This document shows, piece by piece, positions 10,901-63,900 of a stretch of DNA of 64,000 nt. The translations under genes and the position numbers were made by a program. Positions within the stretch are counted from its first letter, which is position 1. The number at the start of each line of letters is the position of its first letter. The stretch is from Ostrea edulis. Taxonomy: Eukaryota. The stretch is from NCBI RefSeq assembly GCF_947568905.1, contig NC_079168.1, positions 19,778,001-19,842,000 of the forward strand. The letters run 5' to 3'. The notes beneath the pieces are model-generated. The model saw only the letters and a program-made list of their open reading frames with translations, did no database searches and had not been told where the DNA came from.

Positions 10901-13900
10901 ACTTTAATGATTTTCATGCTGTGTTTTAGGGTTCAGAGAGAGTTATCTTGCACATAAATGAACTGTTCCCAGAGATGGAACTTCTAAGTCTGAGTGGTAA
11001 TTACTGCACAGACAAAAAACCTGCTGCAGTCAACTGGTAAGTTTTTGGTAGTGGTAATATTTCAATAATTAGTACACTTGTTAAACTGATCAGTCGAAGT
11101 TGTGCTTGCAGAACATGAACTATGGCAACATGTGTAAGTGCATGCATGGATATCTCACGTGGAGATTTTTTAAGAAATGAATTTTATTTTTGAAAATGCG
11201 TTGGCACTTCATGAAGTTTTCGTGAAGTGTTGCAGTGCATTCCCTCATGCATTTTCAAATATGAAATTTATTTTATGCCCCCATAATCAGAGATTCAGGG
11301 GCATATAATTTTTTATCTCTCTGTCTGTGTGTTTGTCCACAAAACCTTTAGCCCTGACCATGACTTTAAAATGGATGGTGATAGGGCTTTCATATTTCAC
11401 ATGTGTATTTTTTTTGGCAAGACCTATCTTTAGGTAGCAAAAATTTTGACCTCACGACATTTGCCTTGGGGTTTGACTTGCTTATGAAAAACTATAACCT
11501 TGGCCACAACTTTTGAATGTTTAGTGCAAGGGCATTCATATTTCATATGTGTATTCCATGTGACAAAACCTTTCTTTGGGTTCTAAATTTTTTTTGGTTT
11601 CATCTCCTTCACCTCGGGGTTTGAACTATTTTCAAAAAACTTCAACTTTGCTGGCATCAGTGTTTCCCAAACACATCTTGTTTATATTTACATTCTACTG
11701 TCATTTTTGTCAAAAAAATTCCCAGCCATTAATATAGATATACTATATTTAGCAACATTCATACACACATTGTTCACAACTGCTTCTCATTCATGAGGAA
11801 ATAGCTATCATTACAATTGGTAAAGATATTGAATGCAAAAACATTGGAAATATACATATTCTACATTGCTCTGCCCTTGTTTTGGAGATAGAAGAAGTGT
11901 TTGCACTTTCTGAAAAGATAATTTTGGATATGGGACATGTTCCGGGTTTTACATTGGAAACAATAATGTAGGGATAATATTCTTTGTAGGATTGAAGGAA
12001 GAGGAAAGTCTGTCGTGTGTGATGCTGTCATTCCAAGTAAAGTGGTGAAGAATGTTCTCAAGACTAATGTCTCTGCCTTGGTAGATCTAAATGTAAACAA
12101 GAATTTAATTGGTTCAGCCATGGCAGGAAGCATAGGAGGATTTAATGCTCATGCTGCAAATGTTGTGTCAGCGATATTTATAGCCACTGGACAGGTACAT
12201 TTTTTTTTTTTAGAATGAAATGAAATTTACAATAAAAAAATAATAGATAAATGATATTTGTTACTTGCTTTGTGATATAATTACGAAGTATAAAATTTTC
12301 AAGAGAAAAGAATAATTATTTGCAAATGTGTATTTTTACAGGAATAAATTGATTTCAGCTTTTGATGTATGATTTACTGACATGTTAGTGATGTTGCAGG
12401 ACCCCGCCCAGTGTGTGGCCAGCAGTAACTGTATAACTCTGATGGAGGCCACGGGACCCACCCAGGAAGATCTGTACATCAGCTGTACCATGCCGTGTAT
12501 AGAGGTGGGGACAGTAGGAGGGGGGACTATTCTAACAGCACAACAAGCCTGTCTTAAGGTAAGCATTTCAAGAAAACTAATGAAGTTGCAAAGTGTATGT
12601 GGTAATACATGTACATGTATTATCATTAATTTGCATGCTTTTGTGTATCTGGAATAATATTTTGGACACCATAATTTTCTGAGGTCAATGTCAAAAATCC
12701 ACTTCATAATTGGTAAGTTAATGTTAGTGTGGTACATACTGAATCCTCTCATTCTTATGATTGCTAAAATAATGAGTGGCAAGAGGAACTGCAGGTTGAT
12801 TTCCAGGTTCAAGGGTCATGGTCGCATTGATCAAGTTATGTTTGGAAATCAGATTATTAACTGTGTTGTGGATAAGATACAAATTGGTACATTAATATAT
12901 GTTCTATATTTATTTATCATTTTCGTGACTTTAGCCTATGAATTAATCAACTTTGAACAGCGGTTTATTAGCTTTATGATGTATATTTGAGTGCCCTATT
13001 TTGTAGCTTTAGAACACAGGTTGAACAGTTTTATGATGGTATATTTGAGTGCCTTATTTTGTAACTTTATTAGTAAATACTGTAGTTATGACCATGTGTA
13101 AGGGATGCTCCATTGTTCAGTGTGGTTGTGATGTTGACTGTATTTTGAATATTGTTTAGATGCTTGGAATACAAGGACCAAATAGTGAGAATCCAGGAGA
13201 CAATGCTAAACAGTTGGCGAGGGTTGTGTGTGGGGCTGTTCTGGCTGCAGAGCTTTCTCTTATGGGGGCTCTGGCAGCAGGTCATCTAGTCAGGAGTCAT
13301 CTTAAATACAACAGGTATATATATGTACATGTAGAATGAATGGTATCCTGAAATCTAGAACTTCACATTGAAATCAATGATAATTGAAAGAGAATTTAAT
13401 TGCGTTAAGACTTGGTAGTACTGGATGTTTTATTTGGCATTCCCAGAAATTTATTGTCACGTTGTAACTTTTTCACATTATTCAAATACATAATGATATC
13501 ATAGAACACCTGAATGACTTGTCGACTGAAAATTCTAAGTATTACAATATGTATATCATACATGTACATGTTGAACTCAAAAGTTAGAAATCCACTATGA
13601 CATAAAGCACCTCTTTGATCACTGGAGTTGTGTCCCCTTTACAGATTCTCTATTTAACACTGTCAATGATTAATGAGTTGTGTCCCCTTTACAGATTCTC
13701 TATTTAACACTGTCAATGATTAATGAGTTGTGTCCCCTTTACAGATTCTTTATTTAACACTGTCAATGAGTAATGAGTTGTGTCCCCTTTACAGATTCTT
13801 GATTTAATACTCTATAGGTGATTAAAGATGTTTCCATGTTTTGTTCAAAATGATTCATAGTCATTATATGTTATATTCACAGGTCAAGTATGTACCTTGC

Positions 13901-16911: not shown

Positions 16912-16951
<40 letters not shown>

Positions 16952-18712
16952 GCGTGTTTATGTTTTAAACCCAACATGGCAGGTGTGACCAGAAAATCAA
17001 TAGGGGGTCATACACGTTGTAAATATGTGCATTAAGTGTGTAATTATAACAAATGAATGCCCTTCAGTCAAAGATTTTTGGTGCCAAGATTAATGATATT
17101 CACCAAATTGTTCAAAAGGAATCGACGGCGAGTTTTCTTCTTCTTAATTTATAAATGAAGACAAAAATGAAATTATATCACTAGATTTATTTGGATGCAA
17201 AATTAACAAGAGCAGAAAAAATTGAAAATTTATCTACATTTACAAACATGTAGGTCAAAATTGTTTTTGTAAAGTGATCTGATGGAACAGGTGAGCCTTT
17301 GAGTTTACAAGTGTATATAAATAGTGGTGATCAGTCCACAGGCTTACAACTGAAAAAATATTTGTTTTTTTAATTTTTTGGAAGTTTACCCAGTATATTT
17401 GAATGAAAAATGGAGATCAACAAAATTCAGTACATAGATGCTTTGAATAGAAATGATAATCATAAACAAGAAATTGTTTTGAAAATAAAAAATGAGCATA
17501 AATGGATTTAAGTGTATTATCCTTAAGTTTGTATCTTAACATAGAGGGTACCTTGGACATCAATATTTTTAATCAAGTGGTTGTGCATGAGCTTACAAGT
17601 ATTCCAGTAAAAATTACGTGGGTGGGGTATATTGCTGGGGTTTTTTTTTCTGTGGGTGGGGTTTTGTTTATATTTTTGTTGTAGAGTTATCAAGTCCTGA
17701 TGTTTTTAATAAGAATATTTTAAACATTTTTTCCTATATATTCCCATGTAAAATTTCTTAAACACTCCTCCTTATATATTCCCATGTAAAAAAAAAAAAA
17801 TCGATCTTCTATGTGGCCCCAACCTTCGCCAGGGGACCATGAATTCCACAAATTTTAATCTGCACTACTTGATAATGCTTTTACATTAAAATGACTAATC
17901 ATTACTATGCTCTTCTTGAGATAAAGATTTTTGAACATATATTTTTTTAAATATTTCAATGTCAAACTTTGAACCCCTATTGTGGCCCCTCCCTACCCCC
18001 TGGGGGCATGACTTGAACAAACTTGAATTTACACTACCTGAAGATGCTTCCATATAAATATGATTAATCACAGCTTTGCTATTCTTGAGAAGAAGATTTT
18101 TAAAGATTTTCCCTATATATTTGTGTGTAAAACTTTGATCCCCCCTTGGGGCCCCATCTTATCCCTGGGGGCCATGATTTGAACAAACTTGAATCTGCAC
18201 TATGTCAGAAAGTTTTCATGTAAAAATCAGCTCTTCTGGCTCAGTGGTTCTTGAGAAGAAGATTTTTAAAGATTTTTCCTATATATTTGTATGTAAAACT
18301 TTGATCCCCTATTGTGGCCCCATTCAACCCCAGGGACCCATGATTTGAACAAACTTGAATCTACATTATGTCAGGAAGCTTTCTTGTAAATCTCAGCTTT
18401 TCTGGCTTAGTGGTTCTTGAGAAGAAGATTTTAAAAGTTTTTCCCTATATATTTGTGTGCAAAACTTTGATCCCCCCTTGGGGCCCCACCCTATCCCCGG
18501 GGGCCATGATTTGAACAAACTTGAATCTGCAATATGTCAGGAAGCTTTCAGGTAAATTTCAGCTCTTCTGGCCCAGTGGTTCTTGAGAAGAAGATTTTTA
18601 AATGACCCCCACCCTATTTTTGCATTTTTGTGATTATCTCCCCTTTGAAAGGGACATGGCCCTTCATTTGAACAAACTTGAAAGCCCTTCACCCAAGGAT
18701 GCTTTTGGCCAT

Positions 18713-18750
<38 letters not shown>

Positions 18751-18752
18751 TC

Positions 18753-18783
<31 letters not shown>

Positions 18784-21700
18784 AGACAGATGGACGCCGG
18801 ACAAAATGTGATCAGAATAGCTCACTTGAACCTTCGGTTCAGGTGAGCTAATAATATATTTTGGTTATACGATAATGATTTCAAAATGTTAAACTAACAG
18901 CATCCCGACCATGACAATCACTTTCACATTGTTTATTATTTTACATCCATTTGAGTATTTTTCACTCATGTAGAGACATCACCAACTTCATGTGAAGTGT
19001 CACAAATTGACATGCAAGGCGCAGAAGTGAAAGTTCTTTATAAATGTGCCACAAAACAAGAACTGTTTTTAAGGTCTCATCTGAAAAACCCTTAACTCTC
19101 ACTTCTAATTAAGTTGTAAGTGCCAAGCATTAGGTGAGGGAGCAATCACTGCCAATATGTTTACGTCTTGGGTTTGCTGCAGCGATGGAACAAGTGGGAC
19201 TTAAAGCCTTGACCTCTATGTCTTGAGGCGAATGCTCAATATTCTAACCACTGAGCCACATATCAGTTACAATACTGGAATGCATTCCTAGACATATCAC
19301 AGTTGCAAGTTGGTCAATGCTGAGATCATGGATACAATGTACTAATATAATTGATGGTAGACATGTTCTAAAACTTTCATCCTTATCACACACATACCCA
19401 GAAAATAACTGATCTGGAAACATCTTCCATGAAAGATCTTCCAATCATTGTTAGACCTATTGAATGATTTTGATAACAAGGACCTGACCCCAAAATATGT
19501 ACCAGTATCTGGTTAAGCTACTGAGTAAGTATGCAAGTTTGGACCTGGTACCATTAATATTCTAGAAGTGCCTTGGGACAATAATGTGCTGGAGACAATA
19601 AAATAAGCCCCCTTCGTCCCTTCACATCATTGAGGTTACTGAGGGGACATTACACTTACATCTCCTCCCTCATTGTCTAGAGTACACAGATAAAACAGGT
19701 CGCCATATCTCAGTGGTTCTCCTTTCTGTTTGCTCCCATCAATACTGAAATAAAAATGAGTATTTATCATATAGACCTTAACAAAAATTTGCATTCTTAC
19801 AGATATATGGAAATGTCAAGTTCAATAATGAAATACATGTATACATAAATTGTATGTCATTCACAGTTAGTCTATAACTGCATGGACTCGTCATATTTTG
19901 AATAATCTTGAATAGTTTAGCCTTGAAAAATTTAAAGTAGACTTTGAACCATTATTGTAATCCTGACCAAATCCAGAAGACGGGTTTAGCAAAGTTGAAT
20001 TGAAAGTTGTCAATAAAATTATCACGTTTTAAAACCATAGCATTAAACCAACACATAAAACTGAGCATAAATGAGTTATAATCCTAATTAAAAACTCAAA
20101 CTATATTGTGGCCTTGTGGTATGGAGTTTGAATATAAACTTGTATTAAATGTGAGGTTTTTTTTATTTCTAAATTCCTTAGTAAAACCACACTTGCCCTA
20201 ACCTTAGGGGTCATAGTTTGAACAAAGATGATTTTATACCACGCTTTTACACATATGGATGCTTGAATGATGAAAATTATACACTTGTTGCTCTTGCAAA
20301 GTAGAATTTCAAGTAATTTTCCTGTGTATTCTTATCATGTAAAGCTTTGGCACCCTACTGTGGTCCAGTTCTCGGCTCTTGAGTCTTATTTCCACACTAC
20401 AGAAGGATGCTTGCATATTGTAAACTTTGACAATTGTGCCTTTGTTTTTTTCTTGAGAAGATTCCTGGTTATTTCCACCAAGATGCACAATAAAAACTTG
20501 ATATGGCCTCAGGTATTGGACTGATGCTGAAAATGACTCAAGATGATGTGGATTGAAAAATTGTTCCACTGATTCCAAAGAAAGTAACATGTGTCTTAAT
20601 TAGGTGTGTAAAGTTTTAACGAGTCTAAGGAACATTGCTGAATATGTGTATTCTAAATTTCCAACCTTACATTTTATATTGGGGCTCCTATTGTCACAAT
20701 GTTTTGGTCCCAATGAGGGGTCATAGTTTGAACAAGTTTGAAACTAATCAAAATGAAGACCTAGGGGCTTGCTTATGATAATTTGTAACCCTTATGATTC
20801 TTTCAGAGAATTTTTTCGAAGAATGAGCTGCTGGATATTTGTATGTAAAACTTAAATGTGTGAACAAACTAATCAATTTACATTATATGAGCCGATGCTT
20901 GACAAATTGTCAGTGACAAGGTCATGGCAGAAATCAGTTACATGATTGACAGCTCGATGATGTATACAAAATATTGTTTCGTCACTGCACACTCAGGAAG
21001 CTCTGTCTCCTCGTGTGCAATAACTCAACAATATTTTGTAAACATCATCTCATGTCATCATGTGACTATTACTTGAGTGTGATTGGCAACACAATTTCAG
21101 TGATATGTTGTAACTGTTTATGCTTTCATAAAGGTTTGCCTCTAACCTTTTTATTACAAAGGAGCTTCTGAGATTGGAACAGAGGTCCTTAGATGCAGAT
21201 ACTTGACAGGGCCCTTCAAGTTTTTGAGCTTCAAGAATTTTGTTAATAGCTGGTGTTACACAAAGCTGACAAGCATCTCGTGGGTCTTTGTTGGCCGTGT
21301 ACTTTGTACGATCTTTTGTTGCTGGACATCGCAAACTCACAATATCCCCAAAGTGAACACAACCGTCTCTTGATATACTAAGGTCCAGCTTTAACAAAAG
21401 AAAAGAAAATTTATTATAAGAATAAGAATGTTTCAAGTTATATGCATGGTTCAGATTTTTTGACAAACAGTGATACCCAATACATAAATCATGCTTACCT
21501 GCTTAAAAATAGTTTGTTCAAGTTTTGTTCTTTTCTGGCATAGGAGCTGTCCCTTTTCCCTCTTTTCTAAGAAATCTTTTAATGTGTCCTGTTAAGTTTA
21601 GAATATTAAGCACAATTACTTGTTCCGGAAATGAATTTTATCTTAATGATTACCTTCAAGTAACTCATATTTGTGCTGCTAAATTATGTATTTATATGCC

Positions 21701-53800: not shown

Positions 53801-56800
53801 AGAGATTATATCTATTGACTTGGATTTTAAGAAAACCATGTGCAGTTAAGATTTTTGTAAATTTATCTGATTTTTTTTTTGCAGGAATCAAAATGTTACA
53901 CTGCATTAGGTCTTTTTGATATTATTTCTGTTGAAGACTTATTGTCAAAATAACTATATGTGGTATTTTAATGTAACAGCGTATATAAATAAGTAAAACC
54001 AGACAGATGATTTAATACTTTTCCCATGCAGATACAATAGGAGACAAAAAATTATGTCAGAATTTGAAGTGATTCCTGATTGATGAGTGTGCATCAATTC
54101 AATATGACTCAATGCATGGGTTTTGAGATAATGTCTATGGACTTTGACATTACACTGATATGAAAATCAGTTTTGGGTTGAACATGTCTGGCACTTCATT
54201 AGCTCCAAGTGTAAAATGCTATGTGTGGGTATGCATTGCCCTTTTACAATTGATTTAGAGTTTAATTCATGATAGCTAAATTTACTATTAAAAGTTCAAG
54301 AATCTCATTGATATATAGAAATTAGAAATTTAAGGATAGGTAGGAGAGTGGCATGAAGAAAGTGTTTGTTCATGAATTTTCCTCATACTTGCTAAAATTG
54401 TAGTAACACCCCCTCCCACCACCCCCCACCCCCCCCCCCCCCCCCACCCCACCTCGCAAATATATCCAAATCATGTGAATGTTCTTGAAAATTTACATTG
54501 CAAAACCCAATTAATTTTCACTATTGTCAAAGACACATCAAATTTTATTTTAAAAAATGTGTTGATGATTTTTTTTTCAAAATACCTGAAATAAGATATT
54601 TCATGGATTTGATATGTCATGGGATTATAAAGTACACAAGCTAACCTCAATGTTAAACAAGGATGGCATATAACTTTGTGCTCTTGCACTGATGTAACTG
54701 TCAATTATTGTCATGAATTATTTTTCAATGCTTATATTTGAAAATTCCTTAAGACTTTACAAATCTGAATATTTCATTATTTCATCAAATTTGAAGGCGA
54801 AATTCGAGAAAAATAGAAAACTTCGCAAAATCACACTTTGGTGATTTTCTAATTCACTCGGGTTGGAGAACCTTATCATTGTGACATCACAATGTACAAA
54901 CAGCTATAATGTCATAGCCTACTTAGGCTATGATGTTATGGATAATAAAGTAACATCAGTCACGATTATGATGTGGGGTTGGAGTCTCCGATGTATTATA
55001 TTTCAATCACATGATCAGTGTCCTGCCTATCCTTAAAGGACACATCGTATGTTTTCAAAGTATATAAAATTATATGCATTTTGTCTTTTTTATGCTTATA
55101 GTAATTAATTTTAATGGTGCGTTTGTCGAAATATTGCGATAATTAGCCACAATACAGATTTGAATATGAGCCCCGATATAAAAAAAAGTCTCGTTAATTA
55201 GTTAGGTAGTCACGTGGTACAGTGACGTCATATGCGACCTTCGACAATCAACTGATAGTAAAAATAGTGTTAAGAAGTTTTAAAAACTCAGCTTTTAGGG
55301 GCCTAATTTATTCACCATGGACACCATTTATTTTGATGTTGACAAATTTCCCGAAAGTTATATGTTTTAGCCACCAGTACATTCGAATAGCGATTTAAAT
55401 ACCTAAATGCAGCGAGGAAAGCGAGTATGAAATCGGCAATTGTGAGTAAATTATAGGCCTAATATTTACATGGGTCCAAATACTATTTGGTAATGTTATT
55501 CATTTAAATATCTGTAATTGGCGTTGTTTTTCTTCTTCTTTCAAACAAACAGTGCAAAATTTATTATTTTTGGATTAGACATATTATGATACATTACATC
55601 ATTGACAACAAGGCCTACTCAGTGTCACGGGTGCATTTAGAAAATAAATTAATGAAATAATCAAATTCAACGTGGAAATCGCAATAATTTATTTCGATAA
55701 AGCAATTTTATTATTATTACTATTTTTAGCTCTTCTGAGCCGAAGGCTCAAAGAGCTAATGCTATGGCCATTTGTGCGGTGTGCGTAAACTTTTTAGAAA
55801 AAGGGCTATAACTCAAGAACCCCTTGGCCAATTTTTTTCAAATTTGTTACAGGGTATCATTGGCCCAAGGGCTTTCATACATACTAAATAGAGGGATGTG
55901 ACCCTTTAACAAGGGGAGATAATCAGGAAAATACAAACAAAAGTAGTGGTTGCTAAAAAATCTTCTTCTCAAGAACCACCGGGCAGATTATCACCAAACT
56001 TACACATAAGGATGAGGATATGTTGTAGATTAAAAATTGTTCAAGGCATTACCCTGGGGCAAAGGGCGTGGTCTCAAGGTCACTTCAAAGTTGACCTAAA
56101 TTTATATTTCCTTAAATCTTTGATATTTTAGTCATTATAAGGACTAGGATCATCAAATTTTGACAGTTGATGCATCTTAGGACCTTGTGTCAAGTTGTCT
56201 CAAAAGTAGGTCACGGTGACCTACTTTTTGAATTTTGCAGGTATTTATTTTAAAATTAATTTTGATGCATATCTTGGACACTTTGAAGCCTATGATCATC
56301 AAAACTTGTCAGTTGGTGGATCATGGGACCTTGAAATGTGTCAACTGAAAAATAGGTCACCGTGACCTACTTCTGAATTTTATGGCTTATCATTTATAGA
56401 TATATTTCAAGTTGTCATTTCAAATACCGAGAGGTTTAGAATCATCAAATCTTGTAAGTTGATGCATCTTGAGGCCTTGAAACATATTTATAAAAAAGTA
56501 GGTCACAGTGACCTACTTTTTGAAATTTGCAGATATTCAAATTTCACATTTTCAATTTTAGATGCATATTTTGGGCACTGTAAAACCTAGGATCATCAAA
56601 CTTTGTCAGTTGATGCGTCTTTAGTCTTCGGTTTGTGTCGACCAAAAAGTAGGTCACCGTGACCTACTTTTGGTATTTGACAGCTAAATTACTATATTTC
56701 AGACACTATTTGACCTACAATCATCAAACTTTGTCAGTTGATGCATCTTGAGTCTTCGGAGTGTATCGACCAAAAAGTAGGTCACTGTGACCTACTTTTG

Positions 56801-59418
56801 GCATTTGACAGTTATATTTATATATTTCAGTCACTAATTGACCTACAATCATCAAACTTTGACAGTAGATGCATCTTGAGTCTACGGAGTGTGTCGACCA
56901 AAAAGTAGGTCACCTTGACCTACTTTTGGAATTTGACGGCTATATTTATATATTTCAGATACTATTTGACCTACAGTCATCAAACTTTGTCAGTTGATGG
57001 GTCTTGCATGTTCGAAGGGTTTCGACCAAAAAGTAGGTCAACTTGACCTACTTTTGGAATTTGACGGCTATATTTATATATTTCAGATACTATTTGACCT
57101 ACAGTCATCAAACTTTGTCAGTTGTTGGGTCTTGCATGTTCAAAGGGTGTCGACCAAAAAGTAGGTCACGTTGACCTCCTTTTGGAATTGGATGGCTATA
57201 TTTATATAATTCAGATACTATTTGACCTACAGTCATCAAACTTTGTCAGTTGTTGGGTCTTGCATGTTTGAAGGTTGTTGATGAAAAAGTAGGTCACCTT
57301 GACCTACTTTTGGAATTTGACGGCTATATTTATATATTCCAGATACTATTTGACCTACAGTCATCAAACTTTGTCAGTTGATGGGTCTTGCATGTTCGGA
57401 GTTCGCTGACCAAAAAGTAGGTCAGCATGACCTACGATTGGAATTTGACAGCTATATTTCAATATTCAGATACTAATTGGCTTAAAATCATCAAACTTTG
57501 TCAGTTGATATTTCTTGGGTTCTCAAAATGTGTAAACCAAAAAGTAGGTCACATTGACCTACTTTTTTGAATTCTTAGGATTTAACTAAAGATTTAGAAT
57601 ACTAAGAGGCTAAGAATAGAAATGGTGGGGTTGTACAATTTATCAGAAGAGCGATTCTAGGCCCTTGGGCCTCTTGTTGAATTTTGATCTACATGTCGTT
57701 AGGATCTGGGATCACGACACTATTCTCTATTTGATATTACGAGTTCATTAAAAAAAAAATTAAAGCATTATAATTTAATTTAAAGTTAGGAAATACAATA
57801 TTTTATTATTTATGATTGAAAGTTCACTATCTTTTATCTTTAAAATTTTTGTAAATCTACCAGTTGGTAGAAACTAGGAGCACAAGTTAGTTGTTAAAGG
57901 TGAAGGTCAGTTGGTGCATGTGTGTATTGAAGACCAAAACAAAATGCTGAACAGTGCTTATAGCTTCGATATAACCATTTCATCGCAATATATCTGGGTC
58001 TCTGTACAACTGGTTTTTGAAAAAGTATATGGACAAAGGCGAATGGCAAAGTCCTTGCACCGACAAAAAAACTGTCCAGATATTTCCCTCATACATTCCT
58101 TCGAAAAATGGAGAAAAACTCAGTCTAAATCTTTCTACTGACAGCTAGTACATCCTTAAATGGCACAAAACACCCCTATGCAATGTTATTTAGATGCTGT
58201 TAATGTGATAATTGGAGTTTTTTGTCATTAAATCTAATCTGTTTATGAAATGGCTAACAACTGTTTTCAAACCCTCTCGCTCGAGGTTACATATGACGTC
58301 ACACATAATGGTGTGTAAAATATCGAAATAAATATGTATATCATAAGATTTGAATTTCATCGCTTTCAAACTCAAAAACTACACTATATGTTTCATTTAA
58401 AACACATCTAACGTAGTTTTAGGCATGAAAAGAATTAATTTTGCTGAAAAAATAAAGTTTAGAAACCTGGGATGTGTCCTCTAATAGATCGAGCTTGTTT
58501 TCTTGTTTTAGAAAGGGGACCAGCATCATGATGAGAGTGTTACCATTAAACACCAGACTGTTATACAAACTATATCAAGTATTCTGAAGGTGAGTGTAAG
58601 TTAGTCACTGATGTTTAGACAAGGAACATCTAATTGCTATAGCTGCAATAATGTAGCCCTATCCAATTTTTTTTATTCTGACATTTTCGGGATAGGGCTA
58701 CAATTCCATAGGATCTCCGTAATGGTGCAAAATAATTTTATGAATAACCGATAATAAACTCTGTGTATTAGTCCCAAATGTTGTTTACACCAAAAGGAGT
58801 ACCAACTTTGTGCTCGGGCATGTCTAATAAACGTGTTTTTCATTAAATATAATGTACAGCATGCAAAATTCTTCGTCTGCTCCGCCATGCTTGTTATCGC
58901 GAGATCTCGTAGGTGGATCTAATGAAAAACCTAAACATTGACAATCAGCGCGAAAATGTAGTTACTCGAGCCACTTCGACAAAGAAAGGAAAATCATATT
59001 GTTGCAGAAAGAATTTACACTCTGCTGTTCGGTTTTTAACTTGATATTAAATTCAAACCTTTTCAATACCGACGAAATAGCTTTCGCCTCTATACTTGTC
59101 CATTGATGTAAATACTACCTTATATGGCATATGCAAATGACTTGACAATCGGAAGTTGAAACTTCAGTACATCAAACATGGCGCACAAATATGAATCGAA
59201 ATTGGAATTTATCGAAATTGTTGAAAACGGTAGAATAGAGCCTCATAAATCTAAAGTTGCAGGTTGTAAATTTATATATTGACTAAGAAACATAGAATAT
59301 CATTTTATTTACGTAAAGAAAGTCAGGAAATGTTTAGAATGAGCGCAAATGTTGCGGGAGTGAATCACTCCCGCATTTGCACCATTACGGAGATCCTAAG
59401 GAGTGGTAGCCCTCTCCC

Positions 59419-59450
<32 letters not shown>

Positions 59451-60707
59451 AAAAAAAAAAAACCCATCAGAGAGGGCTACATTATTGCAGCTACTAATGC
59501 TAGTACAAGTGGTCAAACCATTAAGTATTGTTGTTAGTTTCTGTGGAAGTGGTAGTTTTCATTGATTTCCTAGAATTGTGTAGTTTTGACCAATGGACTA
59601 TACGTCAACACATCAGTTGAGATTATATGTATGTTTTATTTCTTGGTTTAAGGAGGTATACTACGGCGTCATAATGACTGACTTCCTTTTAAAACATGGA
59701 TGAAAACATAAATATCAACAATATTTGTCTATTCCTTTTGGATTTAATTGCCTAGCTGAGTAGCTCAATAGGGTAGTGCTTTGACTGCTAATTTGTAGAT
59801 TGTGGGTTCGAGTCTGGCATGATGTTCATTTTTTTCAGATTACTTTCTACTAAAACTGCATTTTTTGACTAAATAAATAAAGTACATTTGAAAGTTTTCA
59901 AAATATTGTTGTACATACCCTCTATTTTTCATCCATATCAAATTTCACTGCTGTAGTATTCCTCCTTGAGCAAGGATTGCTTAGAATACTAGAAACAAAA
60001 ATTGCTATTATGTTTATACGGCAACACTATATTATTGATCACATTATTTTTGAGAATTTGTTTTTGATGTGACCTTGTGAGTTTACCTTGACAGCAAAAT
60101 AAAGTTATCTTTCATGAAAATCCTCCATAGAGTACGGAGTAAATCCATTAAGGCATGGTAATTGAAATTAAGAATAGCGAAATGTGAGTAATGTGAGGTG
60201 TGTATGCTTCATTTTCACGTGAGACTAGCGAAATGTGAGTAATGTGAGGTGTGTATGCTTCATTTTCACGTGATTAATTTTATGTATGTTGTGATGTATT
60301 GTTTTATCTGTTCAGGTGAAAGAGAAGACTCTGGTGGAAGCCCTCACCCAGAAGCGAGCTACCGCGGGCGACGAGACAGTGGTGATGAACTATAGGATGC
60401 ATGATGTGAGAAACAATGAAGTTACAACAAACTGTGCTTACTTGTCAATTTCATGCCAACAGTTTATAATCTCTTAAATCATATTCATTGGTTTGAATTA
60501 TGATGCTAAATTTCACTAAAATTTGTATCAAAAATTGTATTTAGTATGATGTACATCATAGAAAAATAAATATTTTCTTTTATGATTTTAAAGGCAATAG
60601 CAACGCGTGATGCCATGGCCAAATGTCTATATGGAGCCCTGTTCGATTGGATTGTTCTGAAAGTGAACCAAGCTCTACTGGCCAAGAGACACAACAGTGA
60701 CCATCAG
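37986..60707 (+). CDS. MYO9: Unconventional class IX myosin (MYO9A/B-like), 5' part: RA domain and first part of the motor; gene continues beyond the window
   Basis: Exons 37986-38873, 48034-48128, 51315-51377, 51652-51751, 53272-53372, 53674-53728, 58512-58589, 60316-60405, 60594-60707; all GT-AG and phase-consistent. N-terminal Ras-association domain, P-loop GESGSGKT, switch [30 protein letters not shown]. Confidence 0.95.
45439..46436. mobile_element. (TA)n-inserted non-autonomous DNA transposon with subterminal GCGATGGT repeats
   Basis: ~46-bp imperfect TIR CTATATATATGTAGGACTCCAAAGTGCGATGGTCACTCCAAAG / its complement at 46391-46436. Confidence 0.7.
45749..45866. mobile_element. 118-bp palindromic MITE with TAG..CTA ends and 9-bp TSD (Academ-like), nested in the previous element
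   Basis: GTACCAACC|TAGTCC...GGACTA|GTACCAACC; arms of about 50 bp. Confidence 0.75.
48034..48128 (+). CDS. MYO9: Myosin IX coding exon 2
   Basis: [31 protein letters not shown]. Confidence 0.96.
48116..48177 (+). repeat. 31-bp tandem duplication containing the myosin exon-2 splice donor
   Basis: GAATGGTCCATGG|GTAAGGCTTAACATTTAG present twice, exact match. Confidence 0.95.
48178..48792 (+). mobile_element. AcademH-like non-autonomous DNA transposon (615 bp) with a RecQ-type helicase fragment
   Basis: TIRs TAGTCTAGGTCAC / GTGACCTAGGCTA; 9-bp TSD AACATTTAG (48169-48177, 48793-48801); internal ORF 48317-48625. Confidence 0.75.
48317..48625 (+). pseudogene. Truncated RecQ-like SF2 helicase N-terminus (transposon-borne)
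   Basis: Q-motif-like LKPLQKE, motif I LPAGYGKS, motif Ia [13 protein letters not shown]; stops before the DEAH motif. Confidence 0.8.
50128..50357 (+). repeat. 114-bp tandem duplication
   Basis: CTAAAGGTCTTC...CAGTCAAAATCMATGACCC at 50128 and 50242. Confidence 0.85.
50580..51285 (+). mobile_element. 5'-truncated HINE
   Basis: Internal GGGGTAGGGTTCTGACCCCAGGG repeats; 3' end GGTGAGCAATAAGGCCTGTGGGCCTCTTGTT, 29 nt before myosin exon 3. Confidence 0.7.
51315..51377 (+). CDS. MYO9: Myosin IX coding exon 3
   Basis: [20 protein letters not shown]. Confidence 0.96.
51652..51751 (+). CDS. MYO9: Myosin IX coding exon 4
   Basis: [33 protein letters not shown]. Confidence 0.96.
53272..53372 (+). 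CDS. MYO9: Myosin IX coding exon 5
   Basis: [33 protein letters not shown]. Confidence 0.94.
53674..53728 (+). CDS. MYO9: Myosin IX coding exon 6
   Basis: [18 protein letters not shown]. Confidence 0.94.
55037..58480. mobile_element. TTAA-targeting (Kolobok-like) non-autonomous element interrupted by a HINE
   Basis: TTAA|AGGACACATC at 55033 and GATGTGTCCT|CTAA at 58471-58484; inverted GTGACGTCATATG motifs near 55222 and 58290. Confidence 0.65.
55723..57678 (+). mobile_element. Complete HINE with 11 tandem palindrome-containing units (128-151 bp)
   Basis: 5' TTTTTAGCTCTTCTGAGCCGAAGGCTCAAAGAGCTAA hairpin; subterminal IR TCAGAAGAGC; 3' AGGCCCTTGGGCCTCTTGTT; core AAAAGTAGGTCAnnnTGACCTACTTTT in each unit. 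Confidence 0.88.
58512..58589 (+). CDS. MYO9: Myosin IX coding exon 7
   Basis: [26 protein letters not shown]. Confidence 0.88.
58640..59493. mobile_element. 854-bp non-autonomous DNA transposon with TAG..CTA ends (Academ-like)
   Basis: Perfect 21-bp TIR TAGCTGCAATAATGTAGCCCT; subterminal inverted block GGATCTCCGTAATGGTGCAAA; near-TSD CTAATTGCTA / CTAATGCTA. Confidence 0.7.
60175..60273 (+). repeat. 51-bp tandem duplication upstream of myosin exon 8
   Basis: TAGCGAAATGTGAGTAATGTGAGGTGTGTATGCTTCATTTTCACGTGA present twice. Confidence 0.9.
60316..60405 (+). CDS. MYO9: Myosin IX coding exon 8
   Basis: [30 protein letters not shown]. Confidence 0.93.
60594..60707 (+). CDS. MYO9: Myosin IX coding exon 9
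   Basis: [38 protein letters not shown]. Confidence 0.95.
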
Positions 60708-60719
60708 GTAATAGTCTAC

Positions 60720-60985
60720 CTCACACATGTGGGCGTCTGTCAGTCCCTCAGACATGTGGGTGTCTGTCAGTCCCTCAGACATGTGGGCGTCTGTCAGTCC
60801 CTCAGACATGTGGACGTCTGTCAGTCCCTCAGACATGTGGGTGTCTGTCAGTCCCTCAGACATGTGGGTGTCTGTCAGTCCCTCACACATGTGGGTGTCT
60901 GTCAGTCCCTCACACATGTGGGTGTCTGTCAGTCCCTCAGACATGTGGGTGTCTGTCAGTCCCTCAGACATGCTGGTGTCTGTCA
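60720..60985 (+). repeat. 27-bp minisatellite (~10 copies)
   Basis: (TCAGACATGTGGGTGTCTGTCAGTCCC)n starting 12 nt after the exon-9 donor. Confidence 0.97.
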
Positions 60986-63900
60986 ATTTGTAGATGGGGA
61001 CTCCAAATAAACCAATGCAAAAAAGCCCGTGAGACTCCATGTTTTTCCATGTAAATCTGTTAATATTTAATTTAGGAGAGTAATTTTGTATGTTTACTGG
61101 TAGTGATCATGGATCAGAATACTTTTTAGTATTTCTCGCAACTTCCTTGCACTAGCATTTTGATCAGATGGCCAGATTGCTGTGTTGTGTTTGAGATTGA
61201 TGTCTAAAATGTTGGTTAAACTCGTAATTTACAACACACATTTTCTAGCTGCAGAAATAAAACTTGGTTGCCACTTAGATATCAGGCATTGCAATTGATA
61301 TTTGACATTTATAGTGTTTGTTACTTAAGAAATATCTGCCCTACAAAGGATCAAGATAAAAAGATCAACTGTAACATATACACATATATGCCGATCAAAA
61401 GCTTGTATGTGTTGATAAAATTTTCCACTTGCAATATGTTATCCAAAACACTGTATTTAGTACATTTTAATATTGCCCCCCCCCCCCCCCCCCCAATAAA
61501 AAAACCCAACAAAACAATGAAATTTGATTGAAACATCCATTTAGCTCACAACTTTAAAATGAATCAGAAATATGTAGGTATACATTGGCTGTTGATGTAT
61601 ACAGTTTTAATTACATCACAAAATTATTCATTCTTGTAATTTCTTTAGAATACAAAGAAAAGTTCAAAAGTTTAGCCAAAATTTGTTTTGGGAATGATAC
61701 AGCACAGGATTTATTCTAACATATTTGACTGATAAAACCATTTTACATTTTATCAGTAAACAGTATATGAGAATGTCTGTGCTGGATGTTTCTAAATCCA
61801 AAAACTAAATTAATGTATACAACTATATTTCACTTCAAATTATAAATGATGTGAAATAAAGTGGTGTTTTTTGGTAGGAATGATAAACATCTATTGTAAT
61901 TACTATCTCGCATAGCACTTTTGCTATATAGAAATATGAAATCGCATGCAGGATTATTTACCACATACTTTGGCTTCATAAATTTTTGTGGTTATTATAT
62001 TTCTTGGATCTGTCAACAGATACAATTTTCCTTCTTAAGCAGAAAATGTACCCCATTGATCACTTGATTTTGTATTCTGGCACAACCATGAAGACAATGA
62101 AAATTCATATTCAGCGAAAAATGATGAAGCCAGTATTTTTAGAATTGACTTATTCATTTTACACATTGTATCATCAAATGATGTTGAAGATGCATGCACT
62201 TTATTTTTCCCAATCAAAATGAAATGATTTTATAACTAAATACTTGTAATGACATCATAATGAATTTTTACATTTTGGAAATCAGGTGGTGCACATATTC
62301 TTTGTTTTAAATCGCAATATTTTATTCCAGAGGCCAGAAAATCATCATCACACATAACTCTTGATCGTTGAAATAGTAATAGAGCAAATAACAATGGAAA
62401 ATACGAATAATTTCAAAGTTGTGTAACAAATGTTTGTTACATGTAAAGATGATGAAGTGTCAATTTTAGGATTTGATTGCTGTAAATATATGTTGTTGTT
62501 TTCTTCTGTTATGTCCATATATGGTTTTCTGATCCATGTCTTAAAACCAATACATGTATTATGAGTCAGGAACACTTCTAGTATACCGGTCCCCAATGGG
62601 GCAAAAATAAGTGCCACCAAAGGCAGTTTATTTTATATATATATATATAAGTCCAAATATGAATTCATTGTGTAAAATGAAGTTTAAAAATTATGTTTTT
62701 AAACGAAATAAAAACAGAATGCTAAAAATGTACAGTTTATATTCCAAACTAAATAGAATCCATTGTTGAGGAAATTGTCGCATGTGTGTGGTATTTTGTG
62801 AAATTCTCATGTGTTCAAATTGATTTGTCAGGGGCTGTTGCCCCCAAGCCTCTGCTTAATTACACTCAAACACTGCTGGGCATTCTAACTAGTTATATAT
62901 TACACAAAGCATTAACAAATTTCACTTCAACTTTTTTTTTGGTTTGTTTTACATCTATATAGTTTAACTCAAATGATCAGCTTGACATGTTGGGGGCTGT
63001 GCTTAATTACGCCCAAGTGCCACTGGGCTTTCTGATAATGTTTTTACATGAAACATCGGTGAGATTCACTTCTCAGCCTCTGAGTCGAAAATGCAAATGG
63101 CGATGTGTTTACATTCCACTCAGCAACAAGAAGGGAAATAACTGCTCACGCAGTCACGTGCTACTGGGGACTGGCATACTAGAAACTTGATCTAATTCCT
63201 TGATTTGATTGCTGTAAATATATGTTGTTGTTTTCTTCTGTTATGACCATATATGGTTTGCTGATCCATGTCTCAAAACCAATATTATAAGTCACTAATG
63301 CACTTAATTATTATGGAATGATTCATTTGATTTTAGTCTGTATCTGTATGTGTATTCTGAATATGAAAAATACAAGCAATCTCATGTATTGAAGCTCAAA
63401 TGAATACTGAAATAGTAAGTCAGATAAATTTCTAAGAACTTGTCATCACTTCAAGGTGTAGATGTACTGGAATAAGAAGAATAACTGGGGAACTTGATAA
63501 CTATGTTTTGGAAATGACGGAGGATATTAGCTTGTAGATTTTGTCGTATCGAGGAACAACACTAGGTACCATTTTATGAGATGGGAATATTTTACTCTCT
63601 TTTAATTGTTGTGCTTGCAAGGTGTAGTCAGATTTGTATACCTGTTTGGACAAATTAGAGTTAGTGAGATCATACATTTTATGTTCAGGATGTATTTTCT
63701 GTGGTAAGTTATGCATATTTTCTGTTCAAAAGTACATGTTTTGTAAAACTGCATGATGTTGCCAGAACCTAGTTGAAGAAAAAAAAAAGAAAGATTGGAG
63801 ATTTAAATGCATGTGATCTATAATGTGATTGACATTTAATGGTAGTGACTGTGTAATGCATTATGATGTTTTACTGACATAGACAGTGGATGTTGTGATC

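What the first reader, a model, noticed from the sequence alone, without database searches (positions are those of the whole stretch)
56202..57566. Transposon-borne array of 11 perfect AGGTCAnnnTGACCT palindromes (ERE consensus), most halves also matching the ROR/Rev-erb site
Seen: AGGTCA-nnn-TGACCT at 56208, 56354, 56500, 56651, 56779, 56907, 57035, 57163, 57291, 57419 and 57546. All 22 half-sites are invariant, while the 3-nt spacer varies (CGG, CCG, CAG, CCG, CTG, CCT, ACT, CGT, CCT, GCA, CAT) and the rest of the unit diverges. The period shifts from 146-151 bp to 128 bp. The usual context AAAAGTAGGTCA fits the RORE consensus WAWNTRGGTCA in most halves. Known: IR3 is the estrogen-response element; molluscan ERs are ligand-independent activators that bind it; ROR/HR3 and Rev-erb/E75 bind ROREs. 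Inference: a mobile homotypic nuclear-receptor platform, potentially a portable enhancer or receptor sink. Alternative: the stem is conserved for a structural role in element replication. GGTCA/TGACC motifs are common in bivalve HINE repeats, so the novelty of the motif itself is uncertain.
Basis: partly seen in the sequence, partly recalled or inferred. Interest (0 to 1): 0.72.

Follow-up and report, generated by a model that had tools for sequence, protein, structure and literature searches.

The report
Transposon repeat array of ERE palindromes
The eleven perfect estrogen-receptor-type binding motifs are real and far better conserved than their surroundings. They are the palindromic core of the internal tandem repeat of a known kind of oyster rolling-circle transposon, and sequence alone cannot say whether a receptor, the transposon's own machinery or a DNA hairpin keeps them intact.

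Summary
There are 11 perfect AGGTCAnnnTGACCT sites at the stated coordinates, against 0 expected by chance. All 22 half-sites are invariant, although the rest of the repeat unit has diverged to 53-94% identity. About 26 substitutions were expected in those 12 columns and none is seen.

Each site is the inner half of a longer palindrome, AAAAGTAGGTCA-nnn-TGACCTACTTTT. In five units the arms are 13-14 bp around a single central base. There is one palindrome per monomer: three units of 146-151 bp, then eight of 128 bp.

The array is the second central repeat of a 1.95-kb non-autonomous Helentron (HINE, like the published Cg_HINE elements) at 55727-57678, in a myosin intron. It has a 5' subTIR plus IR, a microsatellite remnant, Cg170-like monomers, a 3' subTIR, a 3' palindrome and T-rich ends. 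A sister element at 16913-18850 carries no such palindromes.

My best reading (0.5) is a cis-acting palindrome kept by selection in the transposon lineage, with the ERE match a by-product. The pattern of invariant arm sequence and a free spacer fits a dyad-symmetric protein site as well, so a nuclear-receptor platform stays open (about 0.25) and untested.

The scan had already flagged similar arrays elsewhere in this genome (s1-287440, s1-271633).

The parts
55727..57678 (+). Whole non-autonomous Helentron (HINE), about 1952 bp, in a myosin intron
   Evidence: Its ends are homologous to the sister element at 16913-18850. Contigs of runs X15 and X18 match up to 57678 and then continue into unrelated DNA. 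The 5' limit is good to about 2 nt.
55729..55741 (+). 5' subterminal inverted repeat, GCTCTTCTGAGCC
   Evidence: Its first 10 nt are the exact reverse complement of 57643-57652.
55745..55756 (+). Left-flank inverted repeat complementary to the 5' subTIR
   Evidence: Read from the sequence. It sits at the same position as the IR of the sister element.
55774..55786 (+). Degenerate microsatellite remnant
   Evidence: It occupies the place of the (GTCT)n tract of the sister element and is followed by the same GTAAACTTTT.
55800..56106 (+). About two degenerate Cg170-like monomers, the first central repeat type
   Evidence: 55955-56106 aligns with the 166-bp monomers of the sister element. The conserved CTTCTTCTCAAGAACC box draws about 200x read depth in run X21.
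56077..56097 (+). AGGTCA-9 nt-TGACCT inside the Cg170-like monomer, with TCAAGGTCA at 56074
   Evidence: It lies where the sister monomer has GGGGGGATCAAAGTTTTGCAC.
56138..57566 (+). Palindrome-bearing tandem array: 3 units of 146-151 bp, then 8 units of 128 bp, the last ending just after its palindrome
   Evidence: TRF, blastn self-hits and the unit alignment.
56150..56172 (+). Second conserved block, unit 1 copy (TCATCAAA..TTG..AGTTGATG); one per unit, about 58 nt upstream of each AGGTCA
   Evidence: TCATCAAA is invariant in all 11 units. The partner arm TTGATG is altered in 4 units.
56202..56228 (+). Palindrome 1, spacer CGG, 13-bp arms around one base
56348..56374 (+). Palindrome 2, spacer CCG, outer stem with 2 mismatches
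   Evidence: -5.1 kcal/mol
56494..56520 (+). Palindrome 3, spacer CAG, 14-bp arms
56645..56671 (+). Palindrome 4, spacer CCG
   Evidence: (-12.5 kcal/mol)
56773..56799 (+). Palindrome 5, spacer CTG
56901..56927 (+). Palindrome 6, spacer CCT
57029..57055 (+). Palindrome 7, spacer ACT; an A..T pair stands where units 1-5 have C..G
57157..57183 (+). Palindrome 8, spacer CGT, one outer-stem mismatch
57285..57311 (+). Palindrome 9, spacer CCT
57413..57439 (+). Palindrome 10, spacer GCA, two outer-stem mismatches
57540..57566 (+). Palindrome 11, spacer CAT, last unit
   Evidence: Run X21 holds the same arms with 2 nt fewer in the centre.
57643..57652 (+). 3' subterminal inverted repeat, TCAGAAGAGC
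57659..57672 (+). 3' terminal palindrome AGGCCC-TT-GGGCCT, followed by CTTGTT to the element end
   Evidence: The sister element has GGCCC-AT-GGGCC at the same place.
16913..18850 (-). Sister HINE of the same flank family, with (GTCT)n and 166-bp Cg170-like repeats and no ERE palindromes

Best explanation
The array is the second central tandem repeat of a non-autonomous Helentron (a HINE of the Cg_HINE type) that inserted into a T-rich site in a myosin intron.

Each monomer carries a 27-31 nt palindrome. Its inner 6 bp per arm happen to spell the consensus ERE, and its 11-12 nt arms fit the RORE pattern. The divergence among units (tree length 2.2 substitutions per site) is much older than the intact, mobile element. 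I infer that it built up in the transposon lineage, and that the palindrome was kept there by purifying selection as a cis-acting element. It would act either as a hairpin or cruciform on the single-stranded rolling-circle intermediate, or as a dyad-symmetric site for a protein the element depends on.

On this reading the receptor-site identity is a by-product. The sites would probably bind oyster ER-type receptors in vitro, but that is not why they are conserved.

Shown: the anatomy, the mobility of the family, the constraint and the hairpin potential.

Inferred: the level at which selection acts, and the role of the palindrome.
For: HINE anatomy is met feature by feature. Searches show the 5' subTIR, the IR, the microsatellite remnant, the central repeats, the 3' subTIR, the 3' palindrome and the T-rich ends. 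The defining features are taken from PMC4067079 and PMC7492417.

The two elements in the window differ at the subTIR (TT against AC). The IR and the 3' subTIR carry the matching changes (AA against GT), so the ends co-vary as functional HINE ends should.

The right flank plus the last unit occurs at 99-100% identity, joined to other DNA, in runs of other organisms. This shows a mobile and fairly young family.

Constraint: 0 of 132 half-site cells and 5 of 132 outer-stem cells changed, against 19% of cells elsewhere. About 26 substitutions were expected in the 12 columns and 0 are seen.

The spacer differs between neighbouring units while both arms are identical. Recent gene-conversion tracts therefore cannot explain the identity.

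Symmetry extends to 12-14 bp per arm, and five units are perfect to a single central base. In unit 7 an A..T pair stands where units 1-5 have C..G and neighbouring units have a C/T mismatch.

The units fold as single-stranded DNA hairpins at -5 to -12.5 kcal/mol, with z-scores of -3 to -7.

A repeat abundant in oyster run X21 has the same arms with 2 nt fewer in the centre (832 of 849 reads). That gives AGGTCA-T-TGACCT, which keeps an 11-bp stem with a 3-nt loop but not the ERE spacing.

An equally invariant TCATCAAA block is not a receptor motif, so conservation in the unit is not specific to the receptor site.

Hairpins are known cis signals of rolling-circle transposons. The Helraiser 3' hairpin acts as a transposition terminator (PMC4778049).
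Against: The conservation is at the level of sequence, not only of pairing. There is not one compensated pair in the inner 6 bp over a long tree, and outer-stem changes are uncompensated.

In Helraiser the stem sequence could be swapped with about 90% activity retained, while loop changes hurt. Here it is the reverse: the loop is free and the stem sequence is fixed.

The sister HINE of the same flank family moves without any such palindrome. There is no perfect palindrome of 9 bp or more in its repeats, so the palindrome is not a general HINE requirement.

The repeat unit shows no significant similarity to the element's own right flank and 3' palindrome.

Only one array could be analysed base by base. 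Other genomic copies were out of reach.
Confidence: 0.5

Rival explanations
1. Nuclear-receptor platform. The palindromes are kept because an AGGTCA-binding receptor binds them. Candidates are the constitutively active mollusc ER as a homodimer on IR3, or monomer-type receptors such as HR3/ROR and E75/Rev-erb on the A/T-extended halves. The element would gain open chromatin or timing of mobilisation, or the host would gain portable enhancers or a receptor sink.
For: There are 11 perfect consensus EREs, and 19 of 22 halves fit WAWNTRGGTCA. The spacing is fixed at 3 nt in all 11 units, the spacer sequence is free, the arm sequence is invariant and there are no compensatory pairs. That is the signature of a sequence-specific dyad-symmetric protein site. 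Given a palindrome, arbitrary 6-bp arms equal AGGTCA about once in 4096. A mollusc ER binds the vertebrate consensus ERE, and the oyster ER is a constitutive activator (PMC3778743 and PMC3886901, abstracts seen). Helitrons that spread transcription-factor sites have a precedent in the HSF-1 sites of Caenorhabditis (PMC6927752).
Against: There is no binding, accessibility or expression evidence of any kind. The finding was picked because of the motif match, from a very large scan, so a chance match of some transposon palindrome to some known motif is expected. Conservation extends beyond an ER footprint and includes an unrelated invariant block. The related abundant repeat in run X21 has a 1-nt spacer. 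A related-species contig has TGACAT in one half-site without compensation (56221 C>A). The lone third TGACCTAC in the 128-bp units is absent from the older units and decayed in unit 11. It is unclear why a non-autonomous DNA transposon would need a receptor.
Confidence: 0.25
2. No selection. The identity of the arms reflects homogenisation (unequal exchange, gene conversion, palindrome self-correction) or a mutational cold spot, and the palindrome has no role.
For: Tandem arrays evolve in concert, and the inner 128-bp units are 80-94% alike. Palindromes can template their own repair.
Against: The edge units are only 53-65% identical to the rest, yet they carry the same inner arms. The 3-nt spacer between the arms differs between neighbours, so conversion tracts spanning both arms are excluded. 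Self-correction should leave compensated double changes about half the time, and none is seen in the inner stem. Outer-stem mismatches stay unrepaired.
Confidence: 0.1
3. RNA-level role. Transcripts of the array fold into hairpins that feed a small-RNA or other RNA pathway.
For: Contigs of small RNA-Seq libraries (X15) cover 57392-57626 and parts of the flanks.
Against: The stems are only 12-14 bp, too short for miRNA-type precursors. No Rfam family reaches its gathering score; the best hit scores 29.5 bits against a threshold of 40 for an unrelated bacterial sRNA. The array lies in an intron, so the RNA reads may be pre-mRNA or DNA carry-over. Contigs cannot show strand or ends.
Confidence: 0.03

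Closest known systems
Cg_HINE elements of Crassostrea gigas (non-autonomous Helentrons carrying satDNA-like central repeats; Vojvoda Zeljko et al. 2020, PMC7492417)
   Same: The module order is the same: 5' subTIR, complementary IR, microsatellite, central repeats of 128-170 bp, 3' subTIR and 3' palindrome. The element also has T-rich insertion sites without target-site duplication, Cg170-related monomers, and two different arrays in consecutive order, as in Cg_HINE_10_13 and _11_12.
   Different: The palindrome-bearing monomer could not be matched to the stored part of that paper's array table. It also could not be matched to the 52 CgiSat consensus sequences (exact 8-12-mers). The published consensus figures are not held as text, so identity with cluster CL6 (147 bp) or CL12 (138 bp) is not excluded. 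GC content is 35.7% here, against 39.6% and 44.9% for those clusters. A conserved internal palindrome in the monomers is not described there.
DINE-1 / HINE of insects and mites (Thomas et al. 2014, PMC4067079)
   Same: The defining structure is shared: subTIRs a few nt from the 5' end, an IR, a microsatellite, central repeats, a 3' stem-loop, TT/T-rich targets and no coding capacity.
   Different: The lineage and the sequences are different. Here the central repeat itself has a long, sequence-invariant palindrome.
Helraiser/Helitron 3' hairpin (transposition terminator; Grabundzija et al. 2016, PMC4778049)
   Same: It is a short palindrome in a rolling-circle transposon that can form a hairpin with a 3-nt loop on single-stranded DNA.
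   Different: The Helraiser hairpin is single and terminal. Its stem sequence is exchangeable and its loop matters. Here there are 11 internal copies, the stem sequence is invariant and the loop is free.
Helitron-borne heat-shock elements in Caenorhabditis (Garrigues et al. 2019, PMC6927752)
   Same: A rolling-circle transposon family carries and disperses clustered consensus sites for a host transcription factor.
   Different: In that case HSF-1 binding and effects on nearby genes were shown experimentally. Here nothing beyond the motif match is known.
Consensus estrogen response element (IR3 of AGGTCA) and ROR/Rev-erb response element (WAWNTRGGTCA)
   Same: The sequence matches perfectly in 11 of 11 sites for the ERE and in 19 of 22 halves for the RORE.
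   Different: Response elements are defined by receptor binding and receptor-dependent transcription, and neither is tested here. The symmetry extends well beyond a receptor footprint.

Membership tests
HINE (non-autonomous Helentron) | 11-15 bp subterminal inverted repeats, with the 5' one a few nt from the end | tested here: met
   55729-55741 pairs with 57643-57652, with 10 of 10 nt complementary. The 5' subTIR starts 2-3 nt from the element end.
HINE (non-autonomous Helentron) | Short IR complementary to the 5' subTIR in the left flank | tested here: met
   55745-55756 lies 3 nt after the subTIR. It co-varies with the subTIR between the two elements of the window.
HINE (non-autonomous Helentron) | Microsatellite at the end of the left flank | tested here: inconclusive
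   Only a degenerate GTGCGGTGTGCGT remains at 55774-55786, where the sister element has (GTCT)n.
HINE (non-autonomous Helentron) | Central tandem repeats in one fixed orientation | tested here: met
   Cg170-like monomers are followed by 11 palindrome units.
HINE (non-autonomous Helentron) | Palindrome after the 3' subTIR, close to the 3' end | tested here: met
   AGGCCC-TT-GGGCCT lies at 57659-57672, 6 nt from the end. On its own the fold is weak (z -0.76), but the sister element has the same palindrome at the same place.
HINE (non-autonomous Helentron) | Insertion in T-rich/TT sites without target-site duplication | tested here: met
   The flanks read ...CTATTTT | element | GAATTTT..., and the element ends in GTT. 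No direct duplication is present. No empty site was available for confirmation.
HINE (non-autonomous Helentron) | No coding capacity; mobilised in trans | tested here: met
   The longest ORF is 61 aa. A 56-aa array ORF has no relatives. The right flank is found joined to other DNA in other runs. The autonomous partner was not identified.
Described Cg_HINE clusters CL1-13 / CgiSat01-52 | Monomer sequence similarity to a published consensus | tested here: inconclusive
   No exact 8-12-mer of the conserved blocks occurs in the held supplements in a matching context. The consensus figures are not held as text, and the species is coded.
Functional estrogen response element | Sequence AGGTCAnnnTGACCT | tested here: met
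   11 of 11 sites.
Functional estrogen response element | Bound by ER, and ER-dependent transcription of a linked gene | not testable with these tools
   No binding or expression data are available. The literature shows only that mollusc ER binds a consensus ERE in vitro or in reporter cells.
ROR/Rev-erb response element | WAWNTRGGTCA | tested here: met
   19 of 22 halves.
ROR/Rev-erb response element | Bound by HR3/ROR or E75/Rev-erb | not testable with these tools
   none
Helitron-type terminator hairpin | Single hairpin near the 3' end whose structure (and loop), not stem sequence, matters | tested here: not met
   The palindromes are internal and present in 11 copies. The stem sequence is invariant and the loop is variable.

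The most novel reading that the evidence does not exclude
A Helentron family of oysters carries, under sequence-level purifying selection, arrays of high-affinity sites for AGGTCA-binding nuclear receptors. The candidates are the constitutively active mollusc ER on IR3, or HR3/E75-type receptors on the A/T-extended halves. The transposon would use a host receptor for its own propagation, and it would seed receptor-bound enhancers or sinks across the genome. That would give a first handle on what the ligand-independent mollusc ER actually regulates.
Probability: 0.2. Interest if true: 0.8.

Novelty: new member of a known kind. Interest (0 to 1): 0.42.

Why it matters
As it stands this is one more tandem-repeat-carrying HINE, a class already known to fill oyster genomes. 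Two points go beyond that.

First, the repeat has a core under unusually clear constraint: 0 changes where about 26 are expected. That makes it a good system for asking what keeps motifs intact inside transposon-borne satellites.

Second, the core is a perfect consensus ERE/RORE in an animal whose ER is a constitutive activator with unknown targets. If receptors bind these arrays, any oyster ER, ERR, HR3 or E75 cistrome will be dominated or confounded by this transposon family, and the family could have rewired nearby genes. If they do not bind, these arrays are a warning against reading response elements from motif matches in bivalve genomes.

Tried and rejected
**More copies from public collections.**
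- A conserved non-palindrome block of the unit gave 0 hits in viral contigs.
- The same block gave 2 chance hits in metagenome contigs, with only 26 nt alike and no palindromes.
- The 27-nt palindrome gave 0 hits in viral contigs.
- It gave 1 chance hit in a bacterial MAG.
- So no unbiased sample of other copies was obtained.

**Protein-search route to other copies.** I searched a 56-aa ORF from the array in the hope that gene callers had translated other copies. No candidates came back.

**Raw reads of an 'oyster metagenome' run (X21).**
- They gave no depth on the unique flanks, so they could not serve for a per-position census.
- They did reveal an abundant repeat with the same arms and a 1-nt spacer.

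**Origin of the unit.**
- Derivation from the element's own 3' end (subTIR plus palindrome): local alignment is no better than shuffles.
- Derivation from Cg170 monomers: not significant.

**Known RNA families.** Nothing reaches a gathering score.

**Match to published oyster satellites.** Nothing matched in the supplements that are held as text. One further paper has no held supplement.

**ERR-type site.** TNAAGGTCA is not met by the palindrome arms. It occurs once in the element, at 56074, in the Cg170-like monomer.

**Literature.** I found no paper in the library linking oyster transposons and estrogen response elements.

Full report
**Observation.** None occurred in 100 dinucleotide-preserving shuffles. 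The spacers are those listed. Tandem Repeats Finder reports a 128-bp array of 7.7 copies at 56585-57566. It is preceded by older units that form a 297-bp higher-order period at 56145-56685. Site-to-site distances are 146, 146, 151, then 128 six times and 127 once. The RORE pattern WAWNTRGGTCA fits 19 of the 22 halves.

**What the motif is part of.** The ERE is the inner half of a longer palindrome, AAAAGTAGGTCA-nnn-TGACCTACTTTT.
- Pairing holds for 12 bp per arm in 7 of the 11 units, and often to 14 bp with one bulged A.
- A scan for perfect palindromes shows that units 1, 3, 4, 5 and 7 are perfect over 13-14 bp per arm around a single central base.
- The older form is therefore AGGTCAC-N-GTGACCT. 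The '3-nt spacer' became a true mismatch only after a G-to-T change shared by the later 128-bp units.
- In unit 7 the pair is A..T, where units 1-5 have C..G and the neighbouring units have a C/T mismatch.
- As single-stranded DNA the 39-nt segments fold at -5.1 to -12.5 kcal/mol, with z-scores of -3.2 to -7.1.

**How strong the conservation is.** I cut the array into 11 units and aligned them.
- Outside the palindrome the units are 53-94% identical. The edge units (1, 2, 3 and 11) are only 53-65% identical to the rest, apart from units 1 and 3 at 73% to each other.
- Of 126 ungapped columns, 45 are invariant, and these include all 12 half-site columns (hypergeometric P 1.5e-6).
- Cells off the column majority are 0/132 for the half-sites, 5/132 for the outer stem, 13/33 for the spacer and 19% for the rest.
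- The central spacer column ties for the highest entropy in the whole alignment.
- A maximum-likelihood tree on the non-palindrome columns has total length 2.2 substitutions per site. That predicts about 26 substitutions in the 12 half-site columns, and none is seen.
- The spacer differs between neighbours whose arms are identical, so recent conversion tracts across the palindrome cannot be the cause.
- A second block, TCATCAAA about 58 nt upstream of each site, is equally invariant. Its potential partner arm TTGATG is changed in four units without compensation.

**The carrier.** The array lies in a 1.95-kb element at 55727-57678 that has every module of a non-autonomous Helentron (HINE). The modules are as defined for DINE-1/HINE (PMC4067079) and for the Cg_HINE elements of the Pacific oyster (PMC7492417). 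In order they are:
- a 5' subTIR at 55729-55741;
- a complementary IR at 55745-55756;
- a microsatellite remnant;
- about two degenerate Cg170-like monomers at 55800-56106;
- the palindrome array;
- a 3' subTIR at 57643-57652;
- a 3' palindrome at 57659-57672;
- a CTTGTT tail, with T-rich flanks and no target-site duplication.

A sister element lies on the minus strand at 16913-18850. It has homologous flanks, a (GTCT)n microsatellite and 166-bp Cg170-like repeats, but no such palindromes. The two elements differ at two subTIR positions (TT against AC), and both the IR and the 3' subTIR carry the matching changes. This is the element-specific co-variation of ends that the Cg_HINE paper reports. 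Two consecutive arrays of unrelated monomers in one element are also described there. The longest ORF in the element is 61 aa.

The host gene is a myosin. An ORF at 60582-61007 on the plus strand hits the Myosin_head domain, below Pfam's own cut-off (26.5 against 33.3 bits).

**Organism and other copies.**
- Twenty public runs hold the stretch or part of it, fourteen of them half of its sampled words or more. One of these is labelled oyster metagenome. The species names are coded.
- Contigs of three other runs (X15, X17, X18) cover parts of the array and flanks.
- X18 and X15 contigs match the right flank exactly up to 57678 and then continue into unrelated sequence. This fixes the 3' end and shows that the family sits at other sites, so it is mobile.
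- One X18 contig over unit 1 differs at 19 of 156 positions. The differences include 56221 C>A, which turns TGACCT into TGACAT with no change in the partner arm. Half-sites are therefore not universally invariant.
- Raw reads of run X21 gave no depth on the unique flanks, so they are not from this species or carry little host DNA.
- About 145-fold depth from X21 piled on 57538-57571 only. 832 of 849 of those reads lacked 2 nt in the centre, and their flanks were unrelated.
- That abundant repeat therefore has the same arms as AGGTCA-T-TGACCT. This preserves an 11-bp stem with a 3-nt loop but not the IR3 geometry of an ERE.
- Pattern scans of viral, metagenome and prokaryote collections returned only chance hits.
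- A protein-search attempt on an array ORF found nothing.
- Earlier notes of this scan report further arrays of perfect ERE palindromes on other pieces of the same genome (s1-287440 with eight sites, and s1-271633). I could not see those sequences.

**Interpretation.** Two things are solid. The array is the central repeat of a HINE, and its palindromic core is under real constraint.

The units are far more diverged from each other than the intact ends of the element or the near-identical right flanks in other species would allow for an in-situ history. The divergence, and hence the constraint, most likely belongs to the transposon lineage rather than to this locus. That is an inference. What the palindrome does for the element is open.

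In favour of a structural role:
- the length of the symmetry;
- the stability of the hairpins;
- the single-stranded, rolling-circle life style of the superfamily, in which a 3' hairpin acts as terminator (PMC4778049);
- the IR1 variant in run X21.

Against a purely structural role:
- the inner arms are fixed in sequence with no compensated pair;
- the loop is free, the opposite of what was found for the Helraiser hairpin, where the stem could be exchanged and the loop could not;
- the sister element does without any such palindrome;
- the unit is not detectably derived from the element's own 3' end.

This pattern is what a sequence-specific, dyad-symmetric DNA-binding protein would produce. 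A nuclear receptor is the obvious candidate, because the match is perfect and extends into the A/T-rich 5' extension used by monomer-type receptors. Mollusc ER binds the consensus ERE and is constitutively active (PMC3778743 and PMC3886901, seen). Helitrons that spread HSF-1 sites are a precedent (PMC6927752). The finding was selected for its motif match from a very large scan, and no binding, accessibility or expression evidence exists.

My probabilities are:

| Reading | Probability |
|---|---|
| Transposon-lineage cis element, with the ERE identity a by-product | about 0.5 |
| Receptor binding is the selected function | about 0.25 |
| Homogenisation without selection | about 0.1 |
| RNA-level role | a few percent |

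In-vitro binding by oyster ER-type receptors is likely in any case, and that alone would not settle the question.

**Comparison with the known.** The element passes the HINE membership test on six of seven features; the microsatellite is only a remnant. It works like the Cg_HINE double-array elements. The palindrome-bearing monomer was not found in the stored part of the Cg_HINE array table or among the 52 CgiSat consensus sequences. The published consensus figures are not available as text and the species is coded, so 'undescribed monomer family' is provisional. It fails the test for a Helitron-type terminator hairpin. It meets the sequence criterion of an ERE and a RORE, but the functional criteria cannot be tested.

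**Limits.**
- One array was analysed base by base.
- The read-laying table was truncated (63 further differences not shown), so the count of half-site changes in related contigs is a lower bound.

Noticed in passing
window 16913-18850 (minus strand): A second HINE of the same flank family, with (GTCT)n, 4.7 Cg170-like 166-bp monomers and about 900 bp of non-repetitive internal DNA. Its subTIR, IR and 3' subTIR differ from those of the studied element by matching (compensatory) changes.
   Followed up: partly
run X21 laid on window 57538-57571: An abundant repeat in another oyster-labelled run has the same 11-12 nt arms with a 1-nt centre (AGGTCA-T-TGACCT) and unrelated flanks. About 800 reads came from 1.9 Gb read. 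It is possibly a different transposon family sharing the palindrome.
   Followed up: partly
window 56074-56097: TCAAGGTCA, an ERR/SF-1-type extended half-site, and AGGTCA-9 nt-TGACCT lie inside the Cg170-like monomer just upstream of the array. The sister element has an unrelated G-rich box at that position.
   Followed up: partly
window 60719-60985: A 27-bp minisatellite of 9.9 copies at 95% identity, overlapping ORFs next to the myosin-head exon hit at 60582-61007.
   Followed up: no
window 31520-31566: A perfect palindrome with 21-bp arms and a 5-nt loop, the longest in the window. A 67-bp tandem duplication lies nearby at 31249-31381.
   Followed up: no
   Followed up: partly
window 10655-10947 and 13625-13811: Two young minisatellites: a 49-bp unit in 6 copies at 94% identity, and a 50-bp unit in 3.7 copies at 97% identity.
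   Followed up: no
window 55773-55925 (run X15): A contig from a small RNA-Seq library matches the left part of the element exactly and then ends in a run of A. This could be a polyadenylated or A-primed transcript ending in the element's A-rich stretch, or an artefact.
   Followed up: no
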